64,000 bases of DNA, taken from contig OZ249450.1 of NCBI GenBank assembly GCA_965235115.1, positions 19,406,001 through 19,470,000 on the forward strand. The letters are read 5' to 3'. Both the position numbers and the translations under genes were made by a program. This DNA comes from Laetmonice hystrix (lineage: Eukaryota). Below are positions 3,086-55,979 of this stretch, piece after piece. Numbering within the stretch: position 1 is the stretch's first letter; each line of letters opens with the position of its first letter. A model generated the notes under the pieces. That model did not search any database, was not told the origin of the DNA, and saw nothing but the letters and a program-made list of their open reading frames with translations.

Positions 3086-3102
3086 TCCACCAGGTGGCGC
3101 TC
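3086..3102 (+). promoter_or_regulatory. CTCF-like motif abutting the stop codon
   Basis: tccaccaggtggcgctc. Confidence 0.55.
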
Positions 3103-3238
3103 ATAGCGGAACCTTTTCCTCTGGTGTCATGGGAGAGGTTGGGTAGGAGGCCGAGCCGCCGTTTTGCTCTTCCGTCAACGATGAGTTATTGAGAGCCTCC
3201 TCGAAGTTGTTCTCCGACTTGCTGCCACGCACACGTGA
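3101..3238 (-). CDS. TPD52: TPD52-like terminal coding exon: SRVRGSKSENNFEEALNNSSLTEEQNGGSASYPTSPMTPEEKVPL*
   Basis: 138 nt; acceptor cctttgtttcag; phase 0; TGA at 3101-3103; FEEALN motif and S/T/P-rich acidic tail as in other D52 proteins. Confidence 0.9.
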   Translation of the reverse strand, partial: SRVRGSKSENNFEEALNNSSLTEEQNGGSASYPTSPMTPEEKVPL

Positions 3239-24200: not shown

Positions 24201-27200
24201 ACCTTGACCTTCTCACTCAACATTAACATGCAGTATAGGAGATTACCAAGCAGTCAGTCAGAAGTGTTACGGAGATAGGGAGATTTCTGTCTAATATCAT
24301 GCCAACTCCAGCCGTGCTCCAGGGCCGCTACACGCGAAGTATATTATCAAGATATACTTCTTACATATTAATACAAGGCCGTCCATGGGAAAATCATCGA
24401 CTTGTGCACAGGAAAGGTTAGTCTAAATATAAGGCAAACTTTTCGGAGGTTTGAAAAACTCACGCTTCAGTGTTGGCAATTTTGTCGCTGACTTCACTGA
24501 TTTTCTCATTGGTCGCCTTGTATCTGTACAAAAACAGCAAACAGAACCTTCCCGTTGTAAAATGTGCTCTTATAATGTCAAATCAAAGGGCTAACCAAGC
24601 AATGGGATTAAATTTGTTAGTTCTGGTTAGAATGATATTGCTTGTTTTTTTAACCTCCTGTGTCCTGCCTTATAAAGGAGGAGGTAATAGATTTAGTCGG
24701 ACCGTTGAGCACAGATAGTACTGGGTCTGTAAATGAAGGCCATGGATTACCGTAACTTGGGGAGTGTGTATCTGTGTGCACACAAATAAAACAATCGGTT
24801 CTCGTCCAAAGCAAAGAGAGAATATTTTCTCATTTCTAGTCTGTTAGAAGTGACTTTTGACATGAGTAAGAGAACGGCAGGTGTGGTTTTCCGTTTCCTC
24901 GTAAATCAAACTGAATTGTTTTTTCAAAACACCTGGTGCGTCTTAAATACTAAACGCAAAAGGCATTCGCTACTATTTAAACTAAGAATCAATGTTGTAC
25001 ATATATATGCTGCCGTTTCCACTTCAAGAATCGTATTATATACATCTCTCGATAGCGCGATCCACAGATGACAGGTATTTGCACAGAGAAGGGGTTGGCA
25101 GATGTAATGTGGCAGACTAAATGATTACAAACTGGGCATCAAAACGGACGTTGGCAGGAAGTGACGTCACAACAGAGCGGGCATGGTACATTAAGGTATC
25201 AGCACATAAAATTATAAACAACACAATTAAATGTAGTGGCGGCGATGGTGTCCGACCTCGCTGATCGTCTGTGTTCTCAACTGTCCTTAATATGGCCTTT
25301 TGAGTTTTGTCCGGCAAAGGGGATTATAATATGTCCGTGTTTTAAAGATTTTCATCTTTCAGGGCCATGTACCTATAATTACTGTCTTTGGTTTTTAAAA
25401 TATCCTCCTATTCCCTACATAATCATAAACAAGACATTGTTATTTTAGTGGCAGCTGTATCAAATAAGCTCTCTCTGGCCAGCAATATTTTTTAAAAGGT
25501 TAAGCTAACAAATGCATATTTCATCGAACTTTGTAAAGGTGACTGAGAAAAAGATAGACGTCAACACTTTCTATGTGATATCATTCAGAGAAAATATCAA
25601 CTACGCCCCACGGTCAGATATAATAAATATGGTACACTTTACTGAACCATTATCAAATACATATCCTCACAGATAAAAGTCATTCATACTTCCTTTAATG
25701 GCTCGTAACACAATAGTTTGGGATCTAATCCATGCCTTATTCTAACGTCTACTCAGAGTGCGAACTACAACATCGAGTACATGCACACCAGATGGCGCTC
25801 CCTGTGCTCCACCACCAGGGGGCACTTGTTACTGGACCCCCCCCCCCCCCGCTGTGCGGGCCCGGCAGCGACCCCCTTCCCCCTCCACTTCCTGGTCAGG
25901 GTGATCCAGGTCTCTGAGCTCCCTCTGAACTGAGCCCGTGTGCTTCACTTGCCAGGACGACTAAACTGCCATGCACCGCAGGAAAATAGCCAAAGGATTT
26001 TTTTTTTTAAGCCAAGCCATTCTACTTCAAATAGATGAATCAAACAGGAAAATCAAGGTTGAAAGATGGAGGGAATTTCGACTTCTTTTACTTTTGTTTA
26101 TTGCCTCATTACATTAGCATTCACTACACTTACTCTGATAAATCAACGACAATAATTAAGTTTTGATGTCGAAATGGAAATTAATTGGCTTTTATAGTGG
26201 CTTAAGAAAGATCAGAATGAATTCGACTTGTTCGTATTTTTTTGGAGCATGTCAAGAATGTCAATCCCAATCTAAGCCAATCACACGCGAGGACACAACC
26301 AACCAATCACACGCGAGAACACAACCAAGCCAGCACAGCCGCGGGGCGCGCAATCCCAGAATGCCTTAGTGACTCACGCTTCGCTGTTCGACACCTTCTC
26401 GCCGGCCGATGTGAAAGTCGCGCTCGTTTTCTGGTACCTGTGTTGATGAAAGTAAAAAACGTCACCGGCTGAGGTAGCTAAACTGACGGCTTGGTAACCA
26501 GTTACAACAACCAGGAAGAAAAACACATTGAATTGGGGATCGTCTGGCTTGGGTTTCTTTTGTCAGAACCTGGAGAAAACAAAACCTGTCTGATTAGTCA
26601 ACTCTCATGTCTGGAAAAATAGACTGCAGCTATCTGAAATCCTCTCCTCATCCTAAATTTGGGTTCAATAAAAATGGATCTCTATGGATGAAATATGTTA
26701 CTGCTAGAATATGGCATGACACTTTGAATGATTACATGAAGCGTTGACTGACAAGGATTCCGTCCCACTTGTTAGTCAAGAGGAAAATTAGTTCTATCGC
26801 CTGCGCTGGTTCCTTTTAGGGCCGTTAGGTGGCGAGGCACACTTATTAAGGGTCGATGGGTCAATTTGTGGGTGTGACGTAAATCTTGCGTCTCTTGAGA
26901 TGACGTCACCAATTGGTTTAACCTTTTGAGGTCTCTGCTGTGACGTTTACGGATGACCGTCATTAAATCTAACGCTGAATACAAGTAGAATAATTATTGT
27001 CAGCTCACAGATTACACACACAACGGTAACACACTCCTGATCTGGTCTGCCAGTCGATGGCTCGCCAACACAAGGGCAGCCATCTTGGACACTGTCTCTG
27101 TCACCGCCTACTGACCTAGGCTGAGTGCCTTCTGTGGTGGCTGAACCTTCATGATAGAATCAGAAACCAGTTTGCCTCCATGAAGGCGGCGGTGGGGGGG

Positions 27201-30200
27201 GGGTGTGTCTCTGCCTGGTGCAGCACGATATTAATATGCTGTGTGTTGCTGTCCTCCATCAACTAGCTCTACATCTACGAGGTCCTTAAAATGATGTACG
27301 AGTCTCGTGCTTAAATTCCCTACAAACTGATATTGACTAGTCCTGACTGTGACAGATACATTCTACTGGGCCAATAAATCACTAGAGAAAGCCACTCTGA
27401 CAAAACAAGAATCCCATGTTGGGTTCCTGCTACCGCCCATGTTTCCAGGTCGGTGCCGCTAGGGGGCAGTGAGTGTCCGAAAGGTCATACTAACAGAACG
27501 CGGCCTCCATTGGTGGAGAGAGTAAATCAGCGGCTGACAATCTCCATATCTGAGGGTTTACGATCACTGCCAGATGAGGCCATCACGTGACCTTCATCAC
27601 GTGACGTCCATGAGTCATCATCTTCCAGAGGATGATGCTGTCTTGACCTCAGAGACCCGGATGCTGTGAATCCCATTGGTTGCTGAGTCAGCTCCTTGAT
27701 CACGTGATCTCGAGATATTGAAGCTAGCCGAGATTACCGACCAGGATTAACTGTGGACCAGTAATCTGCTGCCTCTCACATGGCGCCCATTTACATTTAG
27801 TTCCAATGAATATTTAATGCGTTGATTTAATCCCCCCTTCTTTTCAGGAAAATCATGATTTATTGGTGAAAATGTGAAAACATCAATGTCTTTCGGACGA
27901 TAATGTCTATCAGACATGACGACTTCACTCACAACAACGGTCCACGACAGATGAAGTGTTTTAGTGGTACTTCAGTACAAGTACTTCAGTCAGCAGATCG
28001 CCCCAACTGGCATGAATTAACCTCACAGCCTAATGTAAACATTACTAGTTGTGCATATATGCCGTTTCAATGGCGATGTTTAACAAATGAGACCAACTTC
28101 AGAATACTGATATTCTGTAGAATAAAAAGTATATTATTCATGAACCTAACGTCAACGACTGGCATCCACCGGCTGTGAAACGCCAACTCATGTATCATCA
28201 CACTGTCTCGCTGTCTCAGGGGTGTGACCAGAGAATACATGATTCGTCCTTGGTGAGAGAAGTTTCTGTATCACGTGACTACGTCAAAATTTTAACAGAA
28301 TTACCAACTCAGACGGATGATCTAATATCGTCCCAAGTCTTGAAGACATCAAGTCCCTACCTTCTACCCAATGACTGCTGAATGAACACAAGCCACTGAT
28401 CAGTGGTGAACACCCTAGTCTCAATGTCACTAACTCACACTCTGAACATGGCTTGTGTTCCCTGTCACTCCACGGATGCTGCCTGCCGTTTATTTCAAAC
28501 ATTCCCATTAAACACAAAACTTGAGCCTGAGTTTTACCACACTTTTTATATACTACTTTCTCTTTATTTTTCTGAAGGTAGTCGTGTCCTTCGAAATGTT
28601 GCCGTGAATGAAATACATTTTTAATCAGAATTCTGACATTTATCGCAGCATACCCCGGCATTTTTGTACGGCTCACTCCCTTACGTCAAAGGTCATTCAA
28701 CAAATGAAACCATTTCCGAGGTCACGGGTTGAATGCCACCCGTGTAGACAGACGCTGTGCATGGTACCACACAGGGCCACCACAGTCCACAACCAGACTT
28801 TGCGGCTACAGTTACGGCAATAGCAGCCTAGAACCAGCCAGATGAATGTTGGGTCACAAGGTTCTTTCCGACTGTTCTTTTGAACATCCCATCCGTGATT
28901 TCCCAGTCCTAACGGGCCCTGACACTTGTGGTCATCTCCTTAAACTCGGCCATATTTAGTCTGACAACCTGGGCTGGCACTGCCGTGGGCCACAGTCGGA
29001 GTTCGCGGAGAATGACGTCTAGGGTGGCCTTTGCCCAGACAGGACCCATGAGGTGTACACTTTGAGGGAGGCTATAGAGATTAGCTCTGACTGGCAAGTC
29101 CCAACCACCGCCAGCTGCCACCAACCACGGCTGTGAGTAGTTCACAGGTCTCACTCGCCAAGCCGGTATAAAGGGTTAGCCACAGGACGGCCAGCTTCCA
29201 CAGTCTGACTGGGCACACGGCCACTGCGCGGTCACTGCTAATCCCACTGGTCACTGCAAATCCTACTGGGCACTGCCTGCCTCGGATGGCCTTGAAAACA
29301 ACTGACGTCGGGGTGACAAATTATTGCCACGAGCCACTATGCAATACAGTTCTGAGTCACGGGGGGTGGGGTGGGGTTGAGTGTTTGGAAATTTCACATT
29401 CGTTCCCAATTTAGAAAGACATGAAGGAACGGGAAAGATTCTAATGAAATATCGAATATTTCTACAACTCCTACAAATTACCACAAGACGCCGGTTATCT
29501 GCAAACTTTCCGAGTTTCTCAAACTGACGTCTCAGGATATCACGACATCCAACAGACGGCTCGGGAAGAAACCCCTCCGTGTTCCAGAACATTCTTTCAC
29601 TACTCTGGATCTGACAACAGTCTGACGTAATGGACACTTGGCGACCGGTAATGACTGACTGATGATTACCCTCAAGTGACTACAATGACAGGTTCAGTTT
29701 CCGCAGTTCCAGCTCGGCTTGCTGTGATTAACACTTCTCAACCATCGGTTTCCATGTTTTAACCTTCATGGAATCGTTCTACTGTTCTCCACCACCCGTC
29801 CAATAATCTCCAACTTCCCCTGACTCTGCCAATTACATGCAGTCATCTCAGGTTTAGATATCTCAGCTTTAGATATGAAACAGGATACACATTGTATATC
29901 AAAGTGCTAGACTTGCAAAATCCACATTTCACAAGTTATCGCAAAATATTATACAATATTTCTCAGTAGTAATTGAAGAGAGAAGAGACTCTAAACCTCC
30001 ACTGTCATCACTTCTCTATAGTTCCAGAGTATTCTTTTCATCCGATTCACAAGGATTTCTTATAGACATTCAGGTGTAGGATCCTTTCTTCAGTGAACAA
30101 TGGAGAGTAACCTGTTATAAATGTTCAGCCTGTGTTCTTAGGCTTATTCTACCATGGCAAAATTTCCACAAAATTGGGGGTTCGGGTTTTGGTTTATTTT

Positions 30201-33200
30201 TTTAGATCCGGAGATCGGAAGAAGGGGTTTAGGATAGGTGTGGGGCTGGGAATTGTCACATAATTTAGTTGTTAAACCCAGTTTTCACGGGAATGTTACT
30301 ATCAATGACATTCTCACTTTGCCAGGTTTCATTGATTTTAGTGGCGGTATGTGTGAGTGCCCCATTCTCTCTGTTACAAACAAACAAAAGCCATCCAGTA
30401 ATAGAAGCCGGTCCTTTGTCTACCTCAGGATCATTAAAACCGGCCTCAACTTCAACAAAGGATGGCAATCCCCCAGGATATCACCAACTGGTTCACCCAG
30501 TAAGCACGCCCAGTTCTAGCTCAGGTGAAATGCTACCAGTCGAGGCTAATTAACGTCACTAATTACCCCGGGCTGTGATTACCCGCTGAGCTGCATTCCA
30601 TGCCATACCTTCGTACAATTTAAAATATCTCTATTTTCCGGCTTTCCAAACGCGCTAACAGCCTGATGGAGGTTCCACACAGACAAACCGAGTCCATTGG
30701 CTGTTTTTACTCAGGAAACATATCCTTACAAAGTAAAGCTTTGTTCCACACTCTGCAGCAGGTCGTCCACAGAGTTAGGGCTATGATGAAGACCCCCTTC
30801 ACACTCTGCAGCAGGTCGTCCCAGAGTTAAGGCTATGATGAAGACCCCCCTTCACACTCTGCAGCAGGTCGTCCACAGAGTTAGGGCTATGATGAAGACC
30901 CCCTTCATACTCTGCAGCAGGTCGTCCCAGAGTTAAGGCTATGATGAAGACCCCCTTCATACTCTGCAGCAGGTCGTCCACAGAGTTAGGGCTATGATGA
31001 AGACCCCCCTCCACACTGTGCAGCAGGTCGTCCCAGAGTTAAGGCTATGATGAAGACCCACACTCTGCAGCAGGTCGTCCACAGAGATAAGGCTATGATG
31101 AAGACCCCCACTCTGCAGCAGGTCGTCCACAGAGTTAAGGCTATGATGAAGACCCCCCCTTCATACTCAGCAGCAGGTCGTCCACAGAGTTAAGGCTATG
31201 ATGAAGACCCCCCCTTCACACTCTGCAGCAGGTCGTCCACAGAGTTAAGGCTATGATGAAGACCCCCCCTCCACACTCTGCAGCAGGTCGTTCACAGAGT
31301 TAAGGCTATGATGAAGACCCCCTTCACACTCTGCAGCAGGTCGTCCACAGAGTTAAGGCTATGATGAAGACCCCCTTCACACTCTGCAGCAGGTCGCCAC
31401 AGAGTTAAGGCTATGATGAAGACCCCTTCCAGGTTCGTTTCTACCTATACGATGTGTATGACATGACGGTTGAAGTTAATACAGTTTTCCTCATGTTGTC
31501 CAGGAAAAGTTTAGACTTCAAATCAATCCTTTTTCTGATCGTACCACACATATTATTGCAATGGACATTAAATCCACGAATCAAGTCCGAAGTACAGATT
31601 TTAGTTAAAACTTGAAACATTTGGTCCTACGATATAAATTCATTAGGGAATTTCAAGAGTGTGTTCTTTCAATTTGAATGAATTAAGTGCCAGCTCGGGT
31701 CTAAGCTAACAGAATTTCAGTGCTAATGACATAGTCCATCATTTATCGGATTTCGAGTTCTGTTAAAAAACAAACAAGCACACTTCAATGCAATCTTCTA
31801 CGCAGGCGGTTAGAAGCTGAGAGCTATCCGCCCGTTTTTCGCCTTTCCTTTAACAGATGTATATGGCCCTTTTTCCCGACTCGTTACGATCTAAGAGATT
31901 CCTTAATTGGAACGCCCCGACTAAAGGAGTTTTAAAACGAAACACAAAAAGAGAAACCCAATGTGGTTCTCACATGTCGTAATGCGTGGTGCACAACATG
32001 TATACCGCAGACAGAGATAGAGATAGACAGACAGAGAATCAGATACAGACAGAGATAGACAGACAGAGATAGAGACAGACAGAGATAGACAGATAGAGAT
32101 AGACAGACAGATAGAGGTTGAAACAGATAGAGAAAGGGCACAAAATAAGAAAAGTAAACAATAAGATAGGATTAATTCCCTCTCACTGGCCTGCATGGAG
32201 AAACACCAGCGTACACATTGAACGATTTTTAATCATTCTCTGTACGAAATCAGGGGAAGATTTTAATCCCGCTACATCTGCCTCGCATTAATCACTGCCC
32301 ACGTGACTGCCACAATGGATCACGTGTCGTTTCCAATATGCTCAAATCCTGATGATATATCCGGATACATAATTAATTTTCACTTGTACAGTGACTTATT
32401 TTCTCTCCCTAATGCCAAACTGCATCGCCATTCCATCCATTAATTCAGCGGTCTCTTCTTCCATAGGCATCAAGCTTCCCATCGGGAAGGAACTTCACTC
32501 AAATGTCGCAAGGCATTCCAAAACAGTAAAATTATCGGAAGTAATGTGCCGTATTTTGTTCGGAGTTCCACAAAATCACCACAACGTCAGCGGTTATTTT
32601 CACTTCGGAGAGATTCGTTCTGCAGGAAGTGTTATAACTGTAAGAAACCCGTCCTGGAAACACTTCCCATACAGCACGCATTGATTGAGTGCTAATCAAT
32701 CTAATTAAATCAAGCCTCCATGGCATTGGATTGATTTAGTCTTGATGGAACTTCCATGGTTGCTAATTAAAGCCGTTTTTCCAGTCTCCTCCGGTAGAGA
32801 ATCGAACCACCTGACGGTGCCTACATAACGGGAAACCGGTGGTGGCGGTGGTGGTGGTGGTGGATTGCTTTCCACCCCGTCAACAACAGTTGGTGAGCGT
32901 CAGGGTGAGAACAAGACTTTGTTATGACAGACGACAGAGGTGAAACCCGCACACCGGGACTACGCCTTATCGATAAGTGGCAAGGGTCCCGAGACACAGA
33001 TAGTGTTAAATGACCGGACTTTGATAACCAAGTCGGTAGTACCGGCTGAGGGGAAACCAGTCATTGTTTCTGTACTAACAATCCGACAATGCTCCCTGAG
33101 ATCCATTCTGTTACAGGAGCCCCTCTCTCCCAGGTATAAAGTCGTCGGTCGCTAACACCCAGTGATAGCGACAAGTTGACGAGGAGGGGCACACGATCCA

Positions 33201-36200
33201 GTCTGTTACAGGAGCCCCCTCTCTCCCAGGTATAAAGTCGTCGGCTGCTAACACCCAGTGATGGCGACAAGTTGACAAGGAGGAGGGGCACACGATCCAG
33301 TCTGTTACAGGAGCCCCTCTCTCCCAGGTATAAAGTCATCTGCCGCTAACACTCAGTGATGGCGACAAGTTGACAAGGAGGAGGGGCACACGATCCACAG
33401 CCTGTTACAGGAGCCCCTCTCTCCCAGGTATAAAGTCATCTGCCGCTAACACCCAGTGATAGCGACAAGTTGACAAGGAGGAGGGGCATACGATCCAGTC
33501 TGTTACAGGAGCCCCTCTCTCCCAGGTATAAAGTCGTCGGCCGCTAACACCCAGTGATAGCGACAAGTTGACGAGGAGGGGCACACGATCCAGTCTGTTA
33601 CAGGAGCCCCTCTCTCCCAGGTATAAAGTCGTCGGCCGCTAACACCCAGTGATAGCGACAAGTTGACAAGGAGGAGGGGAACACGATCCAGTCTGTTACA
33701 GGAGCCCCCTCTCTCCCAGGTATAAAGTCGTCGGCCGCTAACACCCAGTGATAGCGACAAGTTGACAAGGAGGAGGGGCACACGATCCAGTCTGTTACAG
33801 GAGCCCCCTCTCTCCCAGGTATAAAGTCGTCGGCCGCTAACACCCAGTGATAGCGACAAGTTGACAAGGAGGAGGGGCACTCGATCCACAGTCTGTCACA
33901 GGAGCCCCCTCTCTCCCAGGTATAAAGTCATCTGCCGCTAACACCCAGTGATAGCGACAAGTTGACAAGGAGGAGGGGCACACGATCCACAGCCTGTTAC
34001 AGGAGCCCCCTCTCTCCCAGGTATAAAGTCGCTAACACCCAGTGATAGCGACAAGTTGACAAGAAGGAGGGGCACGTCGTCCTGCTGCCCGTCACCGGCG
34101 ACATTTATGAGAGAGGTTTTCTATCCCGTCATTTAGTGATCTCTTTTGTTCTATTAGTCTCGAGGCTATCCGGATTATTTCGGCCAGCCTCACGTCTGCC
34201 TTGTCTGTCTCGACTAATCAGACACGAACAACGATGAAAAAAACAGGGTGCACACTTTGATTACTTCTATCTTTTTCCTTTTGTATATCAATTCAAAAAT
34301 ACAATGAAGTGCCGGATATTTGTTCGCTCCGTAAGAAACGTATCAACAAATTAATATCAGACTTTCGTGGCCATATCACATTTGTAGCTAAATATGGTCT
34401 TTTTTCAAAAGTTTCCTTACAATATTCGCTGTCAGTTAAAAATTAATCTGACAGGCAAGTACATCAACCAGGTCTTATTAATACAATTTCGGATTTCACA
34501 TAGATTCTACATCACCATGACAACATTGTAACCTGAGAAACACGAGGCGTTTAATTATCTGTAAGACTTCCTTTCATGACAATTGATGAAATCTAAAACC
34601 AAAACGGGTGGTATCAGGGGTGGGGGCGACTGGTTTCTTCCGGACCTGTCCACAACTGATGGCCAACGTCAGTTATTTATTTAGATCGGGGTGATGATGG
34701 CGATGATGATAGCGATGATACGGGAGGAATCTCACACACCGGGTAAGCACTGTCGTCTCATCGTTAAGTGGCAAGGGTCCCTTAAATTACCAACACGACG
34801 ACAGAAAGCTACAACTCATCGCCTCTCTTTGTACCGAGGGAAAACGGGTACAAATGAATCACAATATGTCTGTATCTTTTGTCCAATTTGCAGCGGACCT
34901 TACACTCCGTGAAACCGCCTAATTATTCTGATACTGTCTGCTGGACCTACTCCCCCTGACCTCCACTACCTCGGCCAACGACCAAATGGTCTCATTTTTG
35001 CGATTGGATCCCTTTTCTTGAAGAAAACAAATTGGAAGACAAAACGGACTGAACAAGAATGTACGACGGAGTCACTCGAACTACATGAAGATATGCCAAG
35101 GATTTAATGAGTGTTCAACGATGGACAAAGATAAATCCATTTGGTGGGCAGACAGCAGACTCCTACCTGACCAAACAGACATGTAATCGTTGCTGGGCCC
35201 CCGGGCCCACTAGTCAGACGTTGGTGTTTTGTTACAGCGTTCTCGCAGCGTCCCCCATCTCCCACCACGTGACCTGTCACAGCCTATCACAGACCGTTCG
35301 TTTCTCACGTGATGAACGCCTATTTATCCTCATCACTGCCGGGCATCATGAATATTCCAAATAATCTCGTCCATGTCCAATATTTGTACTCCTCCACAAA
35401 CTACCCGGAACATCAGTCCTGCTCCCCATGTAAAACCTGCCCCCGGTTATAGCTGGACGTCGCCAGATAATCCAAGGTAACAAGGCAGGAATAACCCCGA
35501 ATCTAATCCTAATCCTTTAGTTCGGTCCCCATGTAGACCACTACCAAAACACATATGCATACCTTTAGCCCTACTTCTTACCCATTTCCCCAATTTCGGG
35601 CACGGTAACAACCTATGTGAGAAACACCAAAAACATCCCTTACAGACGGCCAACCTCTAGCAATTTGACCGATCCTAATGGAGGGCCAACTGTATTTACT
35701 CGCCTTCAGGCCAGTACAGACAAAAACTTTCAAGTCCATCCAATGGTGCACAGTGGGAAGACGCACATGCAGGGTCAATGAAGGTGTCATGTCAGGTAGA
35801 AGTTGTTGTAATATTAGGCAACATCGATTTCATTCAAATGAGGTACCGCGACCCTCTTAAAATATTTGAACGGAACATATCACAGGACAAACGACACCTA
35901 AAGAAATATCTATGGTTGCCACAATGGCGACCGACTAAGTTCATAACTAGTCTTGTACACCCCGTCTCGCTCCGACAGCACACATTACATGTTTGCGTGT
36001 ATCTGTATGGTATGGTCGGTCGTCCAATCACTCCATCCACGCCCCAGTGGAGAGTATAACGGAGCGTGAAACAATCAGGGTGGACATTTATCATTATACA
36101 TCCCTTCTCCCCGACTTCCGCTTACCACCTCCTCCCCTGGGGTGTATTCAGTAGCAGGTACCGTTACAAAACGTTATGAAACGTTCTCCCGTTGACTCTG

Positions 36201-39200
36201 TAAAGTTTCATAACGTTTGGTAACCCTACGTGCTATTGAACACACCGCTGGTTTTGTCATCGATCTGTGGTGATTTCACCCTCCACATCTAAACTCCACC
36301 ATATCGTCAATGTCAACCTACCTCTCTGTCCCTCCTACACCACTCACTCAATCTATACTCGGCAAACCCTCCACATCTAAACTCCACCATATCGTCAATG
36401 TCAACCTACCCCTCTGTCCCTCCTACACCACTCACTCAATCTATACTCGGCAAACCCACCACATCTAAACTCCACCATATCGTCAATGTCAACCTACCCC
36501 TCTGTCCCTCCTACACCACTCACTCAATCTATACTCGGCAAACTCTCCACATCTAAACTCCACCATTTCGTCAATGTCAACCTACCCCTCTGTCCCTCCT
36601 ACACCACTCACTCAATCTATACTTGGCAAACCCTCCACATCTAAACTCCACCATATCGTCAATGTCAACCTACCCCTCTGTCCCTCCTACACCACTCACT
36701 CAATCTATACTCGGCAAACCCACCACATCTAAACTCCACCATATCGTCAATGTCAACCTACCCCTCTGTCCCTCCTACACCACTCACTCAATCTATACTC
36801 GGCAAACCCTCCACATCTAAACTCCACCATATCGTCAATGTCAACCTACCCCCCTGTCCCTCCTACACCACTCACTCAATCTATACTTGGCAAACCCTCC
36901 ACATCTAAACTCCACCATATCGTCAATGTCAACCTACCCCTCTGTCCCTCCTACACCACTCACTCAATCTATACTCGGCAAACTCTCCACATCTAAACTC
37001 CACCATATCGTCAATGTCAACCTACCCCTCTGTCCCTCCTACACCACTCACTCAATCTATACTTGGCAAACCCTCCACATCTAAACTCCACCATATCGTC
37101 AATGTCAACCTACCCCTCTGTCCCTCCTACACCACTCACTCAATCTATACTCGGCAAACCCTCCCATCCCTTTATAATCCTGTAAAAGGATAAACTTACT
37201 GGTAAGAAAGTAATCCTCGCATCTTTCTCCTGCTTTTGTTTCTCATCATCAGTGCTGTGTTGGAGGAAATTAATCCGCCGACATTTTGCTACAGTAAAAG
37301 TTCTCCCTGTGTTGTTTGCAGGCGGATTACATGCGGCAGCAGTCCGGATCTGCGCGTCAAACTTCCCTGCCTCCCATTAACCCTTCCACTTCTCCCAGCT
37401 AATAAACAATATCTAGTAAAATCATATTTCTTCCTTCCCAAGTTGATAATTTCAATGAGTCTTTTCTTAATAACACAACGTGACAGGAAACAGACGGTCC
37501 GCCAGGGTCTATACGTGATGACGCACACAACGCTGGCTTCAAACTTTCCCAATGTTTCACGCAAAAATGATTTCATCTAAGAATATCATTTCCAAACTGG
37601 TAGTCACTTTCAACGTCAGTCACGACTTTATTCATGAATTCCCTTTCTAACACTGTTTGAGGGAGTTAGGGCATGCACATGTCAATTAGAAAGCCATTCC
37701 GACATTTAAATTGCCACTGAAAAGTTTCAATTAAGCATCAGTAGGGCAAAAAGAGAATGACATGACGAGTGTTTGTGAGGGCGGGAAAGTGGCGGCGGAA
37801 TCGGACTGATTGAATGTAAATGTTCCTCCATCATTCCGACACTGATTGCGATCTGATCCGCAGTCTATCTTCTATCTCCAGTCGTACGAATGCTGAGCTA
37901 ACATAACTCCAGGTTACAATCAGGAGTTTTTGTGTGGTTGTTAATCACTCCCTTACTTTAATTATTGCCCGCCTCCCAGGCCGCGATAACACCGTTCAAC
38001 AGGCCTCTAATCCACTTGGACGCCGGCCTAGGCGAGCCAACCCTATAGCACTGTCAGTTTTATCATCACCATATCTTATCAAATTAACTCAGATACACGG
38101 AATCTTTGGTCCTCCACAGCCTAAAGCCACAATAACTCACCGGCTTTTGAAGCTGATTGGAGTGAGACAGCCCGCCCTTCACGTAAATATCTAAAAACGT
38201 CGGGTAAAAACTGAGGGGAGCTTTTGGAATTACTTTTTCTTAAAACCAAACTACGAGAGCGCATGGAACCTGTCAGAATATCACTGCGCGCAACAGCTTC
38301 AGAAGATCAGAGTCTAAATAACATTAGCTCCACTAAATCTACACCAAGACAAATAGTAGAATGACAGCATCCATGCCATGCAGAATCAAAATCGTCATAT
38401 CATTACTATTAGAGAGAAATAGTGCCAGAACATGCTCTATTTATAACACAATATATCCAGCGTAGCATTAAACCATATCGTTCATTGACTCTTGTCACGG
38501 TTCAAACATTCCCTCATACTACAGTTTGCTATATCACAGATAGCTTCTACTCGTATCCCTGTGACAGACAGATCTCGCAGTGTTACACGTTGTATCTCTC
38601 CCTTGCTATATCACAGATAGCTTCTGCTTGTATCCCTGTGACAGACAGATCTCGCAGTGTTACACGTTGTATTTCTCTCTTGCTATATCACAGATAGCTT
38701 CTACTCGTATCCCTGTGACAGACAGATCTCGCAGTGTTACACGTTGTATCTCTCCCTGGCTATATCACAGATAGCTTCTGTATCCCTGTGACAGACAGAT
38801 CTCGCAGTGTTACACGTTGTATTTCTCCCTTGCTATATCACAGATAGCTTCCATCCCTATCTCTGCTCGTATCCCTGTGACAGACAGATGTCGCAGTGTT
38901 ACACGTTGTATTTCTCCGTAAGTTGACACCGTAAGATACCGACATGATTCATGAGACAGAGTACACACATAAAACATCTACTCGGTGAAGTTATTACCAG
39001 GAGACAAGAAACGATCGCAGAGAATACCCAGTATCTTCTGAAATTACACCCCACCCCTCCACAACACCCCCACACCCCCTATCTCACCCCTTCCCCAATC
39101 TGAACCCCTCCCCCGTCCCTCATACTAACGGTGTGGATCACCCTCCCTCATTGAACCCCCCTATGGCAGTCATAAGCTGGCCGATTAAGCCCCCCACGAT

Positions 39201-42200
39201 CCCCCGCCTCCTGAGGCCTAAGCCTCCGGGATCCTCCGTCTCTGAGGCCTAAGCCTCCGGGATCGCTCCCAGATGCTGCCACCCGCTCCGTGGGAGTGGC
39301 TATAAACGCGGACATTCCCTGTGTCCCAGTGATTGAGTTATAATGAGCAGTCTGTTCCCCCACCCCCCACCCGACCAACTGGGTCTCCCTACCCATCATC
39401 CTAAAGTGCAAAACGCTTTAATTTATACATCTGCGTTGAATTAAACTATATATTCACCCGCAAACAAAATGTTTAAAAAAGTGAAATCCAAGAAATATAT
39501 TATCTTTGTGTCAGACATCAAGACAATAGTCACGTGCTGTGACGCTGAGCAGGGTCATCACGCATGGCAACCTCTGCCAAGAGTCCTGATGCGCATCAGC
39601 TGTGAGCCTCAACAAAAATATACCGGGTCTTCCAAGTGTTGCAAGCCAGTAATGTTATAGTCTACCCTTAATGTACATTTTCCTGCCAGCAAGGCTTTAA
39701 ATTTTGATCCTACAGTTGCGGTTCTTTGTGTATGCCAAACCATGGGATTTCCCCGAAGAGGGATGGCGAGACTCCTTTACGCAGCGTTTCGACTTTTTAT
39801 ATATTTTTGTCTTGCTCAATACGACATAAATTGCTCCGAATGTCAGACATACGGCCCTGTGTCTGTCTGCCCGACTGTCTGCCCTTTCGGTGCGGCCGAG
39901 TATGTCTGTGCCTTCCCACAGAACCGTTATGGCCCGATCCACGATTTATGGACGTACACCAACACACTCCAGTTCCCATGACAACCTGTGGCATTCAGTT
40001 TGAAGCTGATAGTCGTACAAAAAACGGCCTAACACAACGGACCAACAATTAACCTGGGAAGGGTGAATGGGTTGAACTGCTGCACAAACTCTCCGGCATC
40101 GGATAGAACGATTCCTGGCAGGATTCTAGCCTTGTGTGGGAACAATTCCGATCAGGAGGGTGAGCCATTAGGGTTACTTACGTCCCTACCATACATCGTC
40201 CCATTATATCAATGGGAACTCTTCACAGCTGAGGGACAAAACATCTCCTCCCCATCATGCTCTAATGTACCGCCATCTCTGAGGCAGGCGTGCTCTCATT
40301 GGCTGTCGCTTGATGAGAACGAGGCTGTGTTACTGTGTTGTAAAAAGAGCCCGGAATGGATCCTTGATGGACTCAGATAGCTGGGCTTTAAGGCATGGAG
40401 GTTTTCAGCCACCAACAACTCACAACACCAGCGGACTTCATGAAAATAGAGTTACAGGCAGGTCAGAAAACACCACTTGATTCGTCCCGCACTTCAGGCT
40501 ACGTCAGATCATTTTATGGAGATGACCTAGACTTGACAGAACTTGCGTTCCAACTTTCTCCACGTCCTTGTTCACATAAAAACGCCATCAGGCAAACAAT
40601 CTTTGTCTGGCAAATGTCTATTCATACCAAACTGGGATTCGAGCATATCAGTGTTATTAATGCCTGCCGTAGGAGTTGGAATGTAAAATTGGAATCGTTA
40701 CAAACAAAGAAAACGCCTATCGAAATATCTCTGACTATCTCAGCCAACCAGTGAAATGTACCTCTTGCATTTATATTACGCCCTCTGCCCACAAAGACTT
40801 TTGAAGGTCATAGTGTAACTGGGAACCCTTTCATGACGTCATACTAGGTCGTCACCCTGACATCACAAGATAAACCTCCGAACCAACCAAATCCTCTGCT
40901 ATTTTTAGATTATTCATCCAGCGATCCCTTTGGCCGCGTCCCTCGTTACCCCGGGAGACAAACCAACGCCATACATCCAGCCAACCACACGCCCTAAATG
41001 AGAACAAATGGTCCATTAGCCGGCCAGATTTGGTGAGGATTTCACGCGTTCCGTTAAATCCCGGAGGGCCGTTTTCTCGGAGCCGAGCGCCCTAATTGAG
41101 GTATAAACATGTCGACCGCCTCCACCCCCGGGGACGGCAGTCTGTACGAAGCCACCGGGGTGCCCACTTCTCCCCTGGAAATCTCCCCCACACATTTACA
41201 GCCAATAACCCAGGACGTAGGAGAAATTAACATTTTCTATAGAAAATGGCGGGTCAAGGCCGGATCTGTCAGACGTCACACTGGTCAGACAACAGGATCT
41301 CTCCCTGCACCACTCCTGACGGCAGTGAACCAATCAAACGTCAGCTCCTGACGGCGGTGAACCAATCAAACTTCAGCTCCTGACGGCAGTGAACCAATCA
41401 AACGTCAGCTCCTGACGGCGGTGAACCAATCAAACGTCAGCTCCTGATGGCGGTGAACCAATCAAACGTCAGCTCCTGACGGCAGTGAACCAATCAAACG
41501 TCAGCTCCTGACGGCAGTGAACCAATCAAACGTCAGTTCCTGACGGCAGTGAACCAATCAAACGTCAGCTCCTGACGGCGGTGAACCAATCAAAAGTCAG
41601 CTCCTGACGGCAGTGAACCAATCAAACCAATCATGATGGGAGGTCACGTGGAAGGTCACGTGGGCCTGTCCTGGGCCCGGTTCACAAGGAAAGTCAAGTC
41701 AATTTTAATTAACTTGAAGTCAGTTTTACTTGATTCTGATTGGTTAAAATGGATTTCAAGCTCATTAAATTTGACTTGACTTTGCTTGTGAACCGGGCCC
41801 TGATCGAGGCGGGTGCCTACCAGGTCCTGATGGACGAGGTACAGGCACGGCACTGTAAACGACCACAGTTATTACGAAACTTTTAACGTAACACCACCTT
41901 ACCCGTGGGGAGGAGGGGGGAGTATGGCCGGGTGGGGCCACTATTGCAGGGGGGCACCCCCATGTCGCTCAATCATCCTTGTAGGAGATTTAAACATTCA
42001 CAAGGACCCAACCTCCTGGAGTGCTACAATACAAATCTCTCAGAACTGTGGAGTAGGGCACTTTGATTGTTACTAATTCAGATTTATCCTTTGCTAAACT
42101 TAGGTTATCAACCCATATAACTTTCTGTTAGTTCTAAGATGTTTCTAAGATCTCGAAATTATAAAAATGTAGACATATTTTTTCCATTCCGCTTTTAAAA

Positions 42201-45200
42201 TACTTTCGCTAATCGCTCGACCCTGAAATTTTAACTTGACGTCCCTGGGGTTCAAAGGCAAATATCTGAGGAATTTTGTGTGTGTGTAACTTTAACATCA
42301 CAAGCCCAGCGGCCAGGTTTGTGGACATTTAATGACATTCTGATTGTGGCAGAGCTTGGGATTTTTATAAAAGGAAACCACCTCGTATCGATTCCACCTG
42401 ATCCCATTTTCCCGTAGAAATTTCACACTTGGGCACTTTTCAGAGGATTCAATGATTCTCATGAAATTTCCCCCAGGCCACATCCAACCCTCGCCCGCCC
42501 TTTGAGAGGGACGTTTTGCCGCAGTAGTTGCGCCACTGACGCTGCCGGCCAGGGCGACCAAGAGAAACGCCATTTTCCGGCTCATTTCGCTGATGGAAGG
42601 GACCGACAACACCCTAATTGCCTGCGATCGTCTCACCTGTAGAAAGAACAGCGGCGGTAGATGCCGGGCGCTTGGCTAACAGAAAAACTCACTTTCCCCA
42701 CAATGTTAGCTCAACAAAAAGGGTTCACGTGACTCGGGTTGAGTGACAGCCCCTCCCCCGCCGTCCGACAATGGGCTCTGAGTGCGCCCCCTACCGGTTG
42801 ATTACAACGGATTGAGGCAAGCTCCGAAAATGGAGGCGCGCTGAACTGTGGGTAGCCACTAACCGGAAACCCGGGCCCAATGGACATAACAATATGTCCC
42901 GCTCTCCACATGGTCCTTGGTCGACAAACTATGGGCTCCTAAACACCCACAACCTAAGTGCTTCAAGCAATTGCAATTCTTGCAATAACCAGTACTTATA
43001 AATATAAATCCAACGTTGATCCATCTACAGAATTTCTGTAATCTATCTCTGATTGGTTCAGTCCAATTCTTGAGACATTTTGTACAGGGATCGCCAAACT
43101 TTTACTTCTGATCACCACAGCTGACCACGCAAAACAGATAACTTCAACAGAATCTGAGTTAGTTCGACTTCTCGGGATGAAAACATCCAACGTCGCCACT
43201 TCCCTGGTTCCTATCATACAGCGCCTCGGTAATGAAAAACGTCTTCATTTTGTGTGAACCGACGACAAACCCAGACGGGTCACGTCGTCCATCTCGGACT
43301 CCCGCCTTTTGTCTGTACGCGCAGACCTTTGTCTCTGCAGACCTTTGTCTCTGCTTCCTGTCCTTCCATCGCCAACCATAGTGATAACGAGGCTGATTAA
43401 CATGTCCACCAAACCGCACGCACCTGCCTTTTTGTTATCTTCACAAGTCTGTCAGGGTCCCTGTCTTTTTGTTATTTTCATAAGTCTGTCGGGGTCCCTG
43501 TCTTTTTGTTATTTTCACTAGTCTGACGTGGTCCCTGTCTTTTTGTTCAACGTTCTTCAAAACCTCTTCAGATCAGGTTTAGACCAAGCCGCAAGGACAC
43601 ACGCAAACTTCCTTGAAATCTAAAAGTCATTCCTGCTGGTTCTATTAATATACTTTAGACACTACAAATAACCTTCAGTACATGCTATCACCATTTAATG
43701 TTCCTCAGGGTATACGTTAAAATTAGAATGACTGCGAGCAAACCACCTCACAACCAGTAGTAGTGTACCCATACAGACGCTTCTCAACCACTCTGTCTAT
43801 CCTCCTGTCTGATCCATCTCAACCACTCTGTCTATCCTCCTGTCTGATCCATCTCAACCACTCTGTCTATCCTCCTGTCTGATCCATCTCAACCACTCTG
43901 TCTATCCTCCTGTCTGATCCATCTCAACCACTCTGTCTATCCTCCTGTCTGATCCATCTCAACCACTCTGTCTATCCTCCTGTCTGATCCATCTCAACCA
44001 CTCTGTCTATCCTCCTGTCTGATCCATCTCAACCACTCTGTCTATCCTCCTGTCTGATCCATCTCAACCACTCTGTCTATCCTCCTGTCTGATCCATGTA
44101 TATCTTTGCTTTATATAGTGTCCTTTTAAAAAAGACAAAATAAATTTCTAAATAAATCTCCAACCCCTTGCAACCTGAGCGCAGTGTAATAACGGCACCC
44201 CTAAGTCCTCTCTGCAGCCCTTCTTTGAACTCTACCCCGTTGTCGTTTTGAGATGTTTAGGATTAGGTCGCGTGTTAGTAGGTGTCTATGTCAGTAGGAT
44301 CCATGCGGGCGGGTCAGACTGTTCAGTAAGACTGGCAGGCTGGGAGAACAGCTCAATGCCATACTTACGGCCCACTCGTCGTTATCCGAGTATTCAGCTC
44401 CGTCAGTTTCTCATTCGTCTTCTTGTACCTGCAGGTAACCAATCAAAACGGTCGGTGAGTGACCAATTAAAATGACAGGTCAGTACCAATCAAAACGGTC
44501 GGTGAGTGACCAATCAAAATGACAGGTCAGTACCAATCAAAACGGTCGGTGAGTGACCAATTAAAATGACAGGTCAGTACCAATCAAAACGGTCGGAGAG
44601 TGACCAATTAAAATGACAGGTCAGTACCAATCAAAACGGTCGGTGAGTGACCAATCAAAACTTTCGGTGGATGCCCGTCAAAACGGTCGGTAGGATATAA
44701 ACGGTCTAAGCTAGCAGTCTTCCATTCCTTGCATAGGTTCAATATTGAAATGACGATGACGAAGAAGAAAAGAAACACAGCGCAGTTCAGCACTTGTCTT
44801 AAAGTGTATACTTGAACACATGAGAGGATTTTGAAGCGAGCCAAGCGTCCTGTGCCCCCCCCCCCCCTGGCTGACCCATTGTAGAAACACGACCCTGGGA
44901 GACACAACGAGCCCGTTAGAGAGCTGGCCCTGTTTGCACCCCACCCCCACCCCCATCCCCATCCCCCGGGGCGGGTCATCCCAGCCGGGAGCGCTGAGGC
45001 CCAGATTATGATCTCCTATTGTAGCTGACATGATTGTATTGTGGAGGAAGGAATGGCTGGCCCTCAGCGCTGCCATGATTAGATCATGCCATGCTCACAC
45101 GGCAACTCGATTACAGTCTTGGGATGCCTGCATTCACGACATTAAAGGCTTCCCTCACACACTGGTTGTGGGGGAAGAGGCTGGGGCAGTCTCCTATTGC

Positions 45201-55113: not shown

Positions 55114-55979
55114 TAGCGCAGCCCTTATGCATCTCCATTTATTCTCGTCGCCAATTTCGCGTTCAGGAGGTAAGCAATAAATCTTGGTTTGGCCCATTCT
55201 CTCTATCTCGTGGCGGCCTGTGCTGGCAGACGACAGACAATGACGGCCATGCAGGCGGGAATACCTGCACACAGTCTGAGGGGCACTGAACACTCAGTTA
55301 TGGCTGCACTGATCTAACCAAGTCTCTCTTAAACCGGTCAGAGAAACTCCACATCATTAAGGCCCATTCATAGTCCAGTCGCCGAACGTTACCGACTAAA
55401 AATCTGACCCCGACTGATGTTCCGGACTATGGACCAGTGGGGCGACCTTGTATAGTTTTAAGAGCGTAGACCACCAACAATTTCAACGACTTCCCTCAGC
55501 CAGCCACCAACCCTGCAGCCTCTCGGTGCTAATATGTGTGCAAATTGCGACCACTTGGAGAATCGTCCAAATTTTCAGACCGTGCAGTGAAAAGTTCCTC
55601 AGCCATTCAAATAAAATCAAATCTCAATTTCTGGTTTTATAAGTTGAATATCAAAATAACTATCTCCATCACTTGGGCCGACAGCTGCAGAGCCACTAAT
55701 TAAGGCCGCTAATTAATAATAGGCGTGATCTCCGAGTGAGACATTCTGCAAGACCAAAATTATTTCCGTACTTCATAGTTACTTTAACTGACTCCTTCGG
55801 ACTAAAGTTGCTCACACTTGCTACTGAATTCAACACAAAGGCTACTGTCTTAATCTAATAAATGCTGCCGATGAAGCCAGTTACCATGGCAACTCAGGTG
55901 TCATCTGATGCAGTTTCTATCTATAGATATCTATATTTATAAGTGTACAAATGTCAAGCTAATAGTCGCCACCACTTTT

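What the first reader, a model, noticed from the sequence alone, without database searches (positions are those of the whole stretch)
24464..44428. Three paralogous 60-nt symmetric exons hidden in a 39-kb intron: a length-tunable amphipathic-helix module in TPD52
Seen in sequence: exons 44369-44428 (YKKTNEKLTELNTRITTSGP), 26378-26437 (YQKTSATFTSAGEKVSNSEA) and 24464-24523 (YKATNEKISEVSDKIANTEA) are each exactly 60 nt and phase 2/2. They have canonical splice sites and align ungapped with each other and with the start of the constitutive exon (YQKTNQALKTVGAKTAGAFS). Hydrophobic residues at about positions 1, 8, 11/12 and 15 suggest an amphipathic helix. Established (from memory): vertebrate TPD54/TPD52L2 has one such 20-aa alternative insert at this position, and this amphipathic region mediates binding to small curved vesicles. 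Inference: all 8 inclusion combinations are in frame, so splicing could set the lipid-binding helix length in 20-aa steps (0-60 aa). Whether they are alternatively spliced, and whether this is already annotated in related species, cannot be seen from the DNA.
Basis: partly seen in the sequence, partly recalled or inferred. Interest (0 to 1): 0.8.

Follow-up and report, generated by a model that had tools for sequence, protein, structure and literature searches.

The report
Three duplicated cassette exons in TPD52
A worm's single TPD52-family gene (vesicle-binding protein) carries three duplicated 60-base mini-exons, each coding one short amphipathic helix; one is spliced into mRNA and two are skipped in the one transcript seen, and scallop and oyster gene models already show the same layout.

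Summary
Three 60-nt, phase-2/2 open segments with AG/GT flanks lie on the minus strand at 44369-44428 (A), 26378-26437 (B) and 24464-24523 (C). They sit in the 38.8-kb intron of the genome's only TPD52-family gene. A profile built only from other species' 20-aa inserts scores them +42, +33 and +40 bits. The next best of 12,915 open 20-mers in the intron scores -12.5, so there are exactly three.

A spliced transcript contig from the sequenced animal joins coiled-coil exon|B|constitutive exon at the predicted sites. B is therefore a real exon, and A and C are skipped in that transcript. Inclusion of A or C was not shown. Their fit to the family consensus and saturated third codon positions argue that they are live cassettes.

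The kind is known. The exons match vertebrate TPD54 "insert 2", which overlaps helix AH2. RefSeq models already show up to three such inserts in scallops and two in oysters, mussels and Lingula, in several combinations.

"Helix length tuning" is not supported. Each module is predicted as a separate ~19-residue helix, about 200 degrees out of register with the next. Splicing would set the number of helices, not the length of one. This is a new member of a known kind, of modest interest. The scan had not noted this gene before.

The parts
55555..55606 (-). Exon 1 coding part (inferred): ATG at 55606, MAEELFTARSENLDDSP plus 1 nt, donor GTGGTC
   Evidence: One search found an ORF with a phase-1 donor. 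Its N-terminus resembles P0279 (..AEEPLF..DD..). The length fits the 368 nt that lie upstream of exon B in the transcript contig. The exon is inferred; no junction was seen.
51654..51781 (-). Exon 2: (N)EVLYDTEARSPEYDNALNQSTEPVDPEERARQEAEWKEELAK
   Evidence: acceptor ttttag, donor gtcagt. The SPEYDN motif is shared with relatives.
50696..50844 (-). Coiled-coil exon: LEDEIQTLRQVLSVKVRSASDLKRRLGITPMVELRHDLKQGIQNIKDSD(A)
   Evidence: Pfam TPD52, E = 1e-14. Sequence. Its 3' end is joined directly to exon B in the RNA contig (loose end at 26437).
44369..44428 (-). Cassette exon A: YKKTNEKLTELNTRITTSGP, 60 nt, phase 2/2
   Evidence: cag|...|gtaagt. PSSM +42.3 bits. It is 13/20 identical to the insert of P0288 and 12/20 to the Pecten and Lingula inserts. 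It is skipped in the one transcript contig seen. Inclusion was not shown.
44438..44660 (.). 47-nt minisatellite that abuts the acceptor of exon A
   Evidence: 4.7 copies, 97% matches. The last subunit merges into GATTGGTTACCTGCAG|G.
26378..26437 (-). Cassette exon B: YQKTSATFTSAGEKVSNSEA, 60 nt, phase 2/2; expressed
   Evidence: cag|...|gtgagt. PSSM +33.2 bits; a 2569-nt contig of run X4 covers 26376-26437. Its flanks read the end of the coiled-coil exon and the start of exon D.
24464..24523 (-). Cassette exon C: YKATNEKISEVSDKIANTEA, 60 nt, phase 2/2
   Evidence: cag|...|gtgagt. PSSM +39.8 bits. It is 11/20 identical to the insert of the annelid Ridgeia (P0317). No X4 contig lies on it, and it is skipped in the B-containing contig.
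11748..11849 (-). Constitutive exon D: YQKTNQALKTVGAKTAGAFSTAGAFASKKLGDM(R), 102 nt, phase 2/2
   Evidence: Pfam TPD52, E = 5e-6. It is joined to exon B in RNA (loose end at 26376).
7450..7510 (-). Exon E: (R)NSTAFKSFEEKLGGAYTNVK, the D52 motif region
   Evidence: acceptor tgtag, donor gtgagt. It is 80% identical to P0283.
6542..6577 (-). Candidate second cassette: HSRSIGSLRSKM, 36 nt, phase 0/0
   Evidence: aag|CAT...ATG|gtaggt. Homologous inserts occur in relatives. Not tested by RNA.
3101..3238 (-). Last coding exon: SRVRGSKSENNFEEAL...PEEKVPL plus stop
   Evidence: The C-terminal EEKVPL is shared with relatives.

Best explanation
This is the single TPD52-family gene of a spiralian, most likely an annelid. 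Between the coiled-coil exon and the constitutive 'YQKT...' exon it carries three old tandem duplicates of one 60-nt cassette exon. These are homologues of vertebrate TPD54 insert 2, which codes most of amphipathic helix AH2.

Each cassette adds one discrete amphipathic helix of about 19 residues plus a short break. Any subset keeps the frame.

In the sequenced animal the assembled transcript contains B only. A and C are most likely regulated cassettes that are tissue- or stage-specific or minor. By setting how many AH2-like helices (0-3) precede the ALPS-type region, splicing would change how strongly the dimer binds small, highly curved vesicles, or perhaps its curvature preference. It might also change how it self-associates.

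Shown: exon anatomy, homology, the cc|B|D splice, and skipping of A and C. Inferred: use of A and C, combinatorial inclusion, and the effect on membranes.
For: - Anatomy and phase.
- Single-copy TPD52 gene.
- Exactly three modules, far above background against an independent PSSM.
- Direct splice evidence for B with A and C skipped.
- Identity between the paralogues is 10-13/19 and 9-11/19 at codon positions 1 and 2, but 6-8/19 at position 3. There is no similarity in the flanking introns. The copies are old and have been kept at the protein level.
- A and C match expressed or annotated inserts of other spiralians (11-13/20) better than they match each other (8/20).
- RefSeq models show 0-3 inserts in scallops (Pecten maximus X2 = 3; X3/X5 and X12 = 2; X6 and X8 = 1; X9/X10 = 0). 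All four combinations of two inserts are modelled in oysters.
- Each module is amphipathic: muH 0.35-0.47, shuffle p 0.004-0.034.
- AlphaFold2 gives one helix per insert at pLDDT about 77-89.
- Human AH2 overlaps insert 2 and, with AH3, dominates membrane binding.
Against: - No RNA shows A or C included. Only one RNA-like run exists, and it is held as contigs, which drop minor isoforms.
- Exon A's region was never laid.
- No protein of this species is in the protein collections.
- The codon-position argument rests on 19 codons per pair and cannot exclude recent loss of use.
- Membrane binding is extrapolated from human TPD54. The AlphaFold model is of a scallop protein and has low pTM (0.27).
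- Exon A has a weak polypyrimidine tract, and a minisatellite lies at its acceptor.
Confidence: 0.7

Rival explanations
1. Only B is a working exon. A and C are unused leftovers of old exon duplications (pseudo-exons) that happen to keep an open frame and splice-site-like flanks.
For: The only transcript seen has B alone, and no contig of the RNA-like run lies on C. A 60-nt frame stays open by chance about 38% of the time. Exon A has a poor polypyrimidine tract and a minisatellite at its acceptor.
Against: A and C score higher than B against the cross-species insert profile: +42 and +40 bits against +33. They are 55-65% identical to inserts used in other spiralians. Third codon positions are saturated while first and second are kept. 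Donors are consensus GTAAGT and GTGAGT. Introns next to them have lost all similarity, so neutral copies of that age should have decayed too.
Confidence: 0.15
2. The three exons are used one at a time (mutually exclusive choice of helix variant), not additively. Splicing would then swap the flavour of one helix instead of changing the number of helices.
For: The transcript seen holds exactly one of the three. B differs in type from A and C: it is a hybrid of insert-like and constitutive-like sequence. Close relatives' transcripts carry either an A-like or a B-like single insert.
Against: In scallops, oysters, mussels and Lingula the homologous cassettes are modelled together in one isoform. 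All combinations stay in frame, so nothing enforces exclusivity. No docking/selector-type complementarity was found within 600 nt of the exons.
Confidence: 0.25
3. The modules mainly tune protein-protein contacts (TPD52 self-association or partner binding) through a heptad-like pattern, rather than lipid binding.
For: Hydrophobic residues at positions 1, 8, 15 and 11/12 fit heptad a/d positions (sequence). A review reports that TPD54 interacts more strongly with +ins2 isoforms than with -ins2 isoforms. AlphaFold2 gives these helices fairly high confidence, pLDDT 77-89.
Against: In human TPD54, AH2 (which overlaps insert 2) together with AH3 has the predominant role in binding liposomes and cellular vesicles. 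The modules are rich in Ser/Thr/Gly and low in hydrophobicity (<H> 0.02-0.08), which is more typical of membrane-induced helices than of stable coiled coils.
Confidence: 0.3

Closest known systems
Vertebrate TPD52L2/TPD54 'insert 2' (residues 106-125), overlapping amphipathic helix AH2 (Q101-V120)
   Same: It holds the same position, directly after the coiled-coil exon and before the 'YxKT...' exon. It has the same 20-aa size and is an alternative cassette. It is amphipathic-helical, and AH2 contributes strongly to nanovesicle and liposome binding.
   Different: Vertebrates have one such cassette, and the review describes it as restricted to TPD54. Here a single ancestral-type gene has three paralogous copies. 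Exon B is a hybrid of the insert type and the constitutive type.
RefSeq isoform models of scallop TPD52/D54-like genes (Pecten maximus LOC117316216 X2, Ylistrum balloti, Mizuhopecten yessoensis X4)
   Same: These are single spiralian genes with three tandem 20-aa inserts at the same place. Isoforms with 3, 2, 1 or 0 inserts are modelled. Our three-insert reading aligns end to end at 53-54% identity.
   Different: They belong to a different phylum. The 20-aa modules are too short to tell whether the three copies are orthologous or arose independently. Here only the B-only transcript is seen. None of the scallop inserts is B-like.
Two-insert TPD52/D54-like genes of oysters, mussels and the brachiopod Lingula
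   Same: The same cassette type is duplicated. In oysters all four inclusion combinations are modelled.
   Different: They have two copies rather than three.

Membership tests
TPD52 (tumour protein D52) family, Pfam PF04201 | Profile match above the curated cut-off | tested here: met
   The coiled-coil exon scores 55.2 bits and exon D 27.1 bits, against a cut-off of 25. In the genome-wide six-frame search they score 55.9 and 25.8 bits, and this is the only locus.
TPD52 (tumour protein D52) family, Pfam PF04201 | N-terminal coiled coil followed by the Ser/Thr/Ala-rich helical region and the NSxxFKSFE motif, with a short acidic C-terminus | tested here: met
   The exon translations align collinearly with 46 family members. 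Identity to the closest proteins is 72-73% over 104 residues.
Insert-2-type 20-aa cassette of TPD52-family genes | A 60-nt symmetric exon between the coiled-coil exon and the constitutive YxKT exon | tested here: met
   all three are 60 nt, lie between phase-2 introns and have AG/GT flanks.
Insert-2-type 20-aa cassette of TPD52-family genes | Sequence similarity to inserts of other species | tested here: met
   PSSM built from 65 foreign inserts: +42.3, +39.8 and +33.2 bits, against -12.5 for the best background 20-mer. Best matches are 11-13/20 identical.
Insert-2-type 20-aa cassette of TPD52-family genes | Alternative inclusion shown in RNA | tested here: inconclusive
   B is included and A and C are skipped in one transcript contig. 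Inclusion of A or C, and skipping of B, were not observed. Only contigs of one run were available.
Amphipathic, membrane-binding helix (AH2-like) | Helical amphipathic pattern | tested here: met
   muH is 0.40, 0.35 and 0.47 for A, B and C, with shuffle p of 0.034, 0.007 and 0.004. AlphaFold2 gives one helix per insert in the scallop homologue.
Amphipathic, membrane-binding helix (AH2-like) | Curvature-dependent binding to lipid vesicles | not testable with these tools
   Known only for human TPD54. It needs liposome assays.

The most novel reading that the evidence does not exclude
The insert-2/AH2 cassette is not a TPD54-specific vertebrate feature. It is an ancestral bilaterian module that spiralians have repeatedly amplified to two or three copies. 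Combinatorial splicing then gives a natural series of proteins with 0-3 extra amphipathic helices, which sets the strength or curvature range of nanovesicle capture in different tissues. Exon B would be a distinct hybrid type that serves as the default.
Probability: 0.3. Interest if true: 0.55.

Novelty: new member of a known kind. Interest (0 to 1): 0.35.

Why it matters
TPD52-family proteins mark and bind the smallest transport vesicles. How their amphipathic region reads curvature is still being worked out, and the role of the alternative 20-aa insert is called unclear in a 2026 review.

A gene that can add zero to three copies of that helix would be a ready-made natural series for testing how the number of helices affects vesicle binding. 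The data also show that the insert is much older and more widespread than the vertebrate literature states: one copy in arthropods, and one to three in annelids, molluscs, brachiopods and nemerteans.

For this genome the practical gain is a corrected gene model. It has three cassette exons, plus one more candidate cassette, inside very long repeat-rich introns.

Tried and rejected
- **RNA runs.** Two run searches found only one study of this organism. There are three DNA-like runs and one small run, X4, that behaves as RNA. Reads were laid on the B-C region, so exon A's own region was never laid.
- **Own-species proteins.** Three protein searches and one whole-library HMMER search found nothing closer than about 73% identity. 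Isoforms with A or C could not be looked up.
- **Spliced protein.** I did not hand in a spliced protein of this gene to any database or folding tool. It has no reference and would have had to be typed. The exact look-up of the 229-aa B isoform in the contig index was left out for the same reason.
- **Metagenome contigs.** A scan with the coiled-coil exon found no relative.
- **Fourth copy.** No more-diverged copy exists in the intron.
- **Recent duplication.** Rejected: the flanking introns share nothing, and exon nucleotide identity is only 27-33/60.
- **Docking/selector RNA pairing for exclusive splicing.** Nothing above shuffles within 600 nt.
- **One continuous amphipathic helix.** Rejected on helix register and on the predicted breaks.
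- **The 20-mer at about 59155** (GTKTSAGFTEASSRYTKSFG) is a chance hit with no splice sites.
Full report
**What is in the sequence.** The feature lies on the minus strand. Read as reverse complement, the three segments are cag|GTACAAG...GGGCC|gtaagt (A, 44428-44369), cag|GTACCAG...GAAGC|gtgagt (B, 26437-26378) and cag|ATACAAG...GAAGC|gtgagt (C, 24523-24464). Each is 60 nt, made of one base, 19 codons and two bases. They translate to YKKTNEKLTELNTRITTSGP, YQKTSATFTSAGEKVSNSEA and YKATNEKISEVSDKIANTEA. Upstream is a 149-nt exon (50844-50696) that ends GC|gtatgt. Downstream is a 102-nt exon (11849-11748) that starts cag|GTATCAG and reads YQKTNQALKTVGAKTAGAFS.... The intron between them is 38,846 nt. 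Every subset of A, B and C keeps the frame, and the junction codons are always Ala or Pro.

**The gene.** Pfam TPD52 (PF04201) matches the upstream exon (55.2 bits) and the downstream exon (27.1 bits), both above the cut-off of 25. A six-frame search of the whole 627-Mb assembly finds only this locus. The rest of the model could be traced:
- Exon 2 lies at 51781-51654, the NSTAFKSFEEK... exon at 7510-7450, and the last coding exon at 3238-3101.
- A likely first coding exon lies at 55606-55555.

With B alone the protein would be 229 residues. The closest proteins in the public collections are 72-73% identical over the core. One of them sits in the transcriptome of Siedleckia, a parasite of polychaete worms, so it probably comes from the host. 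Named relatives are annelids, molluscs, nemerteans and a brachiopod. Earlier notes of this scan on other windows also call the genome annelid. I take the animal to be an annelid. This is an inference.

**More than chance, and exactly three.** I built a position matrix from 65 different 20-aa inserts of other species, with none from this window. I scored every splice-compatible open 60-nt candidate in the intron. There are 79, close to the roughly 58 expected by chance. A, C and B score +42.3, +39.8 and +33.2 bits, and the next scores -39.4. Among all 12,915 open 20-mers on that strand, the best other score is -12.5. A cruder BLOSUM scan of the whole window gave the same picture on both strands.

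**Are they exons?** The two run searches found a single study of this organism. One run, X4, has only 58 Mb of contigs and comes from the same sample as the DNA runs. Laid on 23500-27500, X4 gives one contig of 2,569 nt that touches the stretch only at 26376-26437. Its overhangs read, in mRNA sense...AGGCATCCAGAACATCAAGGACTCAGACGC before the exon and (GT)ATCAGAAGACGAACCAGGCCCTAAAGACGG after it. These are the last 30 nt of the coiled-coil exon and the start of exon D. The DNA run X1 covers the whole stretch evenly. B is therefore a real exon, spliced at exactly the predicted sites. In this transcript A and C are skipped, which rules out constitutive use of all three. No X4 contig lies on C. Contigs drop minor isoforms, so this shows nothing about absence.

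**Evidence that A and C are live cassettes rather than relics.**
- They fit the cross-species insert consensus better than the expressed exon B does.
- They are 11-13/20 identical to inserts carried by transcripts or gene models of other spiralians (P0288, Pecten, Lingula, the annelid Ridgeia). That is more than their identity to each other, 8/20.
- Between the paralogues, identity is 10-13/19 and 9-11/19 at codon positions 1 and 2, but 6-8/19 at position 3. The flanking introns share nothing above shuffles. Nucleotide identity is only 27-33/60.

The copies are therefore old and have been held at the protein level. The numbers are small, and a recent loss of use cannot be excluded.

**Comparison with what is known.** Human TPD54 has a 20-aa alternative "insert 2" at residues 106-125, whose function a 2026 review calls unclear. 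It overlaps AH2 (Q101-V120), one of four amphipathic helices. AH2 and the ALPS-type AH3 dominate binding to small liposomes and cellular nanovesicles.

The review states that insert 2 is restricted to TPD54, but the protein searches show otherwise. Among about 240 family members with recognisable anchors, the distance from the coiled coil to the NSxxFKS motif falls into classes of 33, 53, 73 and 93 residues, corresponding to 0, 1, 2 or 3 inserts, with 78, 93, 14 and 3 proteins. Within that pattern:
- The three-insert proteins are RefSeq models of scallops: Pecten maximus X2, Ylistrum balloti and Mizuhopecten yessoensis X4.
- Pecten also has models with inserts 1+2, 2+3, 2 only, 1 only and none.
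- Oysters have all four combinations of two inserts.
- Mussels and Lingula have two inserts.
- One-insert forms occur in spiders and termites.

The multi-cassette layout is therefore already in public annotation. I found no paper that describes it.

**How it most likely works.** Each module alone is amphipathic: muH is 0.40, 0.35 and 0.47, and shuffles reach this in 0.4-3.4% of trials. A 20-residue period turns the hydrophobic face by about 200 degrees from one module to the next. As a single helix, the whole-chain moment falls to 0.03-0.08. Exon A ends S-G-P. AlphaFold2 on the scallop three-insert isoform, with a 46-sequence alignment, gives the coiled coil and then separate helices at 116-134, 136-154 and 156-174. 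There is a one-residue break three residues before each module's Tyr, and pLDDT is about 77-89. The human paper likewise reports separate predicted helices and notes that AH1 and AH2 are out of register. Splicing would therefore change the number of short helices, not the length of one.

My best reading (confidence 0.7) is that the number and type of AH2-like helices tunes vesicle binding of the dimer. Tuning of self-association is a non-exclusive alternative, because the 1/8/15 and 11/12 pattern is also heptad-like and +ins2 isoforms of TPD54 interact more strongly. Whether the exons are used additively or one at a time is open. The only transcript has one exon. Close relatives' transcripts carry either an A-like or a B-like insert. 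However, mollusc models combine them, and I found no docking/selector complementarity.

**Verdict.** The exons are real members of a known cassette type in a known family, and the three-copy layout has annotated precedents in scallops. This is a new member of a known kind, useful for annotation and as a possible natural test series, but not surprising to a specialist who looks at invertebrate gene models.

Noticed in passing
window 6542-6577 (-): A candidate 36-nt phase-0/0 cassette exon codes HSRSIGSLRSKM (aag|CAT...ATG|gtaggt). It lies between the NSTAFKSFEEK exon and the last exon. Similar 12-15-aa inserts after '...NVK' occur in relatives' transcripts and in Pecten isoform X3.
   Followed up: partly
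window 44438-44660: A 47-nt minisatellite runs right up to the acceptor of exon A. It has two 23/24-nt subunits, 4.7 copies and 97% matches. Its last subunit merges into GATTGGTTACCTGCAG|G, and each unit carries a CTGAC branch-point-like motif. It looks like the splice-junction-adjacent minisatellites noted elsewhere in this genome.
   Followed up: partly
window 3464-63972, e.g. 13677-15391, 16371-17054, 30747-31426, 33100-34075, 36278-37168: The introns of this gene hold more than 20 minisatellite arrays with periods of 24-99 nt and up to 19.5 copies. The strand-biased ones account for the GC-skew dips at 14-16 kb and 36-38 kb.
   Followed up: no
window 26378-26437 (exon B): Exon B is a hybrid. 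Its first 15 residues (YQKTSATFTSAGEKV) resemble the start of constitutive exons of other species, and its end (SNSEA) resembles the insert type. MAFFT aligns it with the constitutive module. A B-like insert (YQKTNETFHKVGDSVSNTTA) is carried by transcript-derived relatives such as P0266.
   Followed up: partly
protein P0279 (EukProt, Siedleckia nematoides transcriptome): This 'apicomplexan' TPD52 protein is 73% identical to the gene here and has a metazoan TPD52 architecture. It is probably contamination from the polychaete host.
   Followed up: no
protein P0341 (Lineus longissimus isoform X22): The nemertean TPD52-like gene has at least 22 RefSeq isoform models, so heavy alternative splicing of this gene seems general in spiralians.
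   Followed up: no
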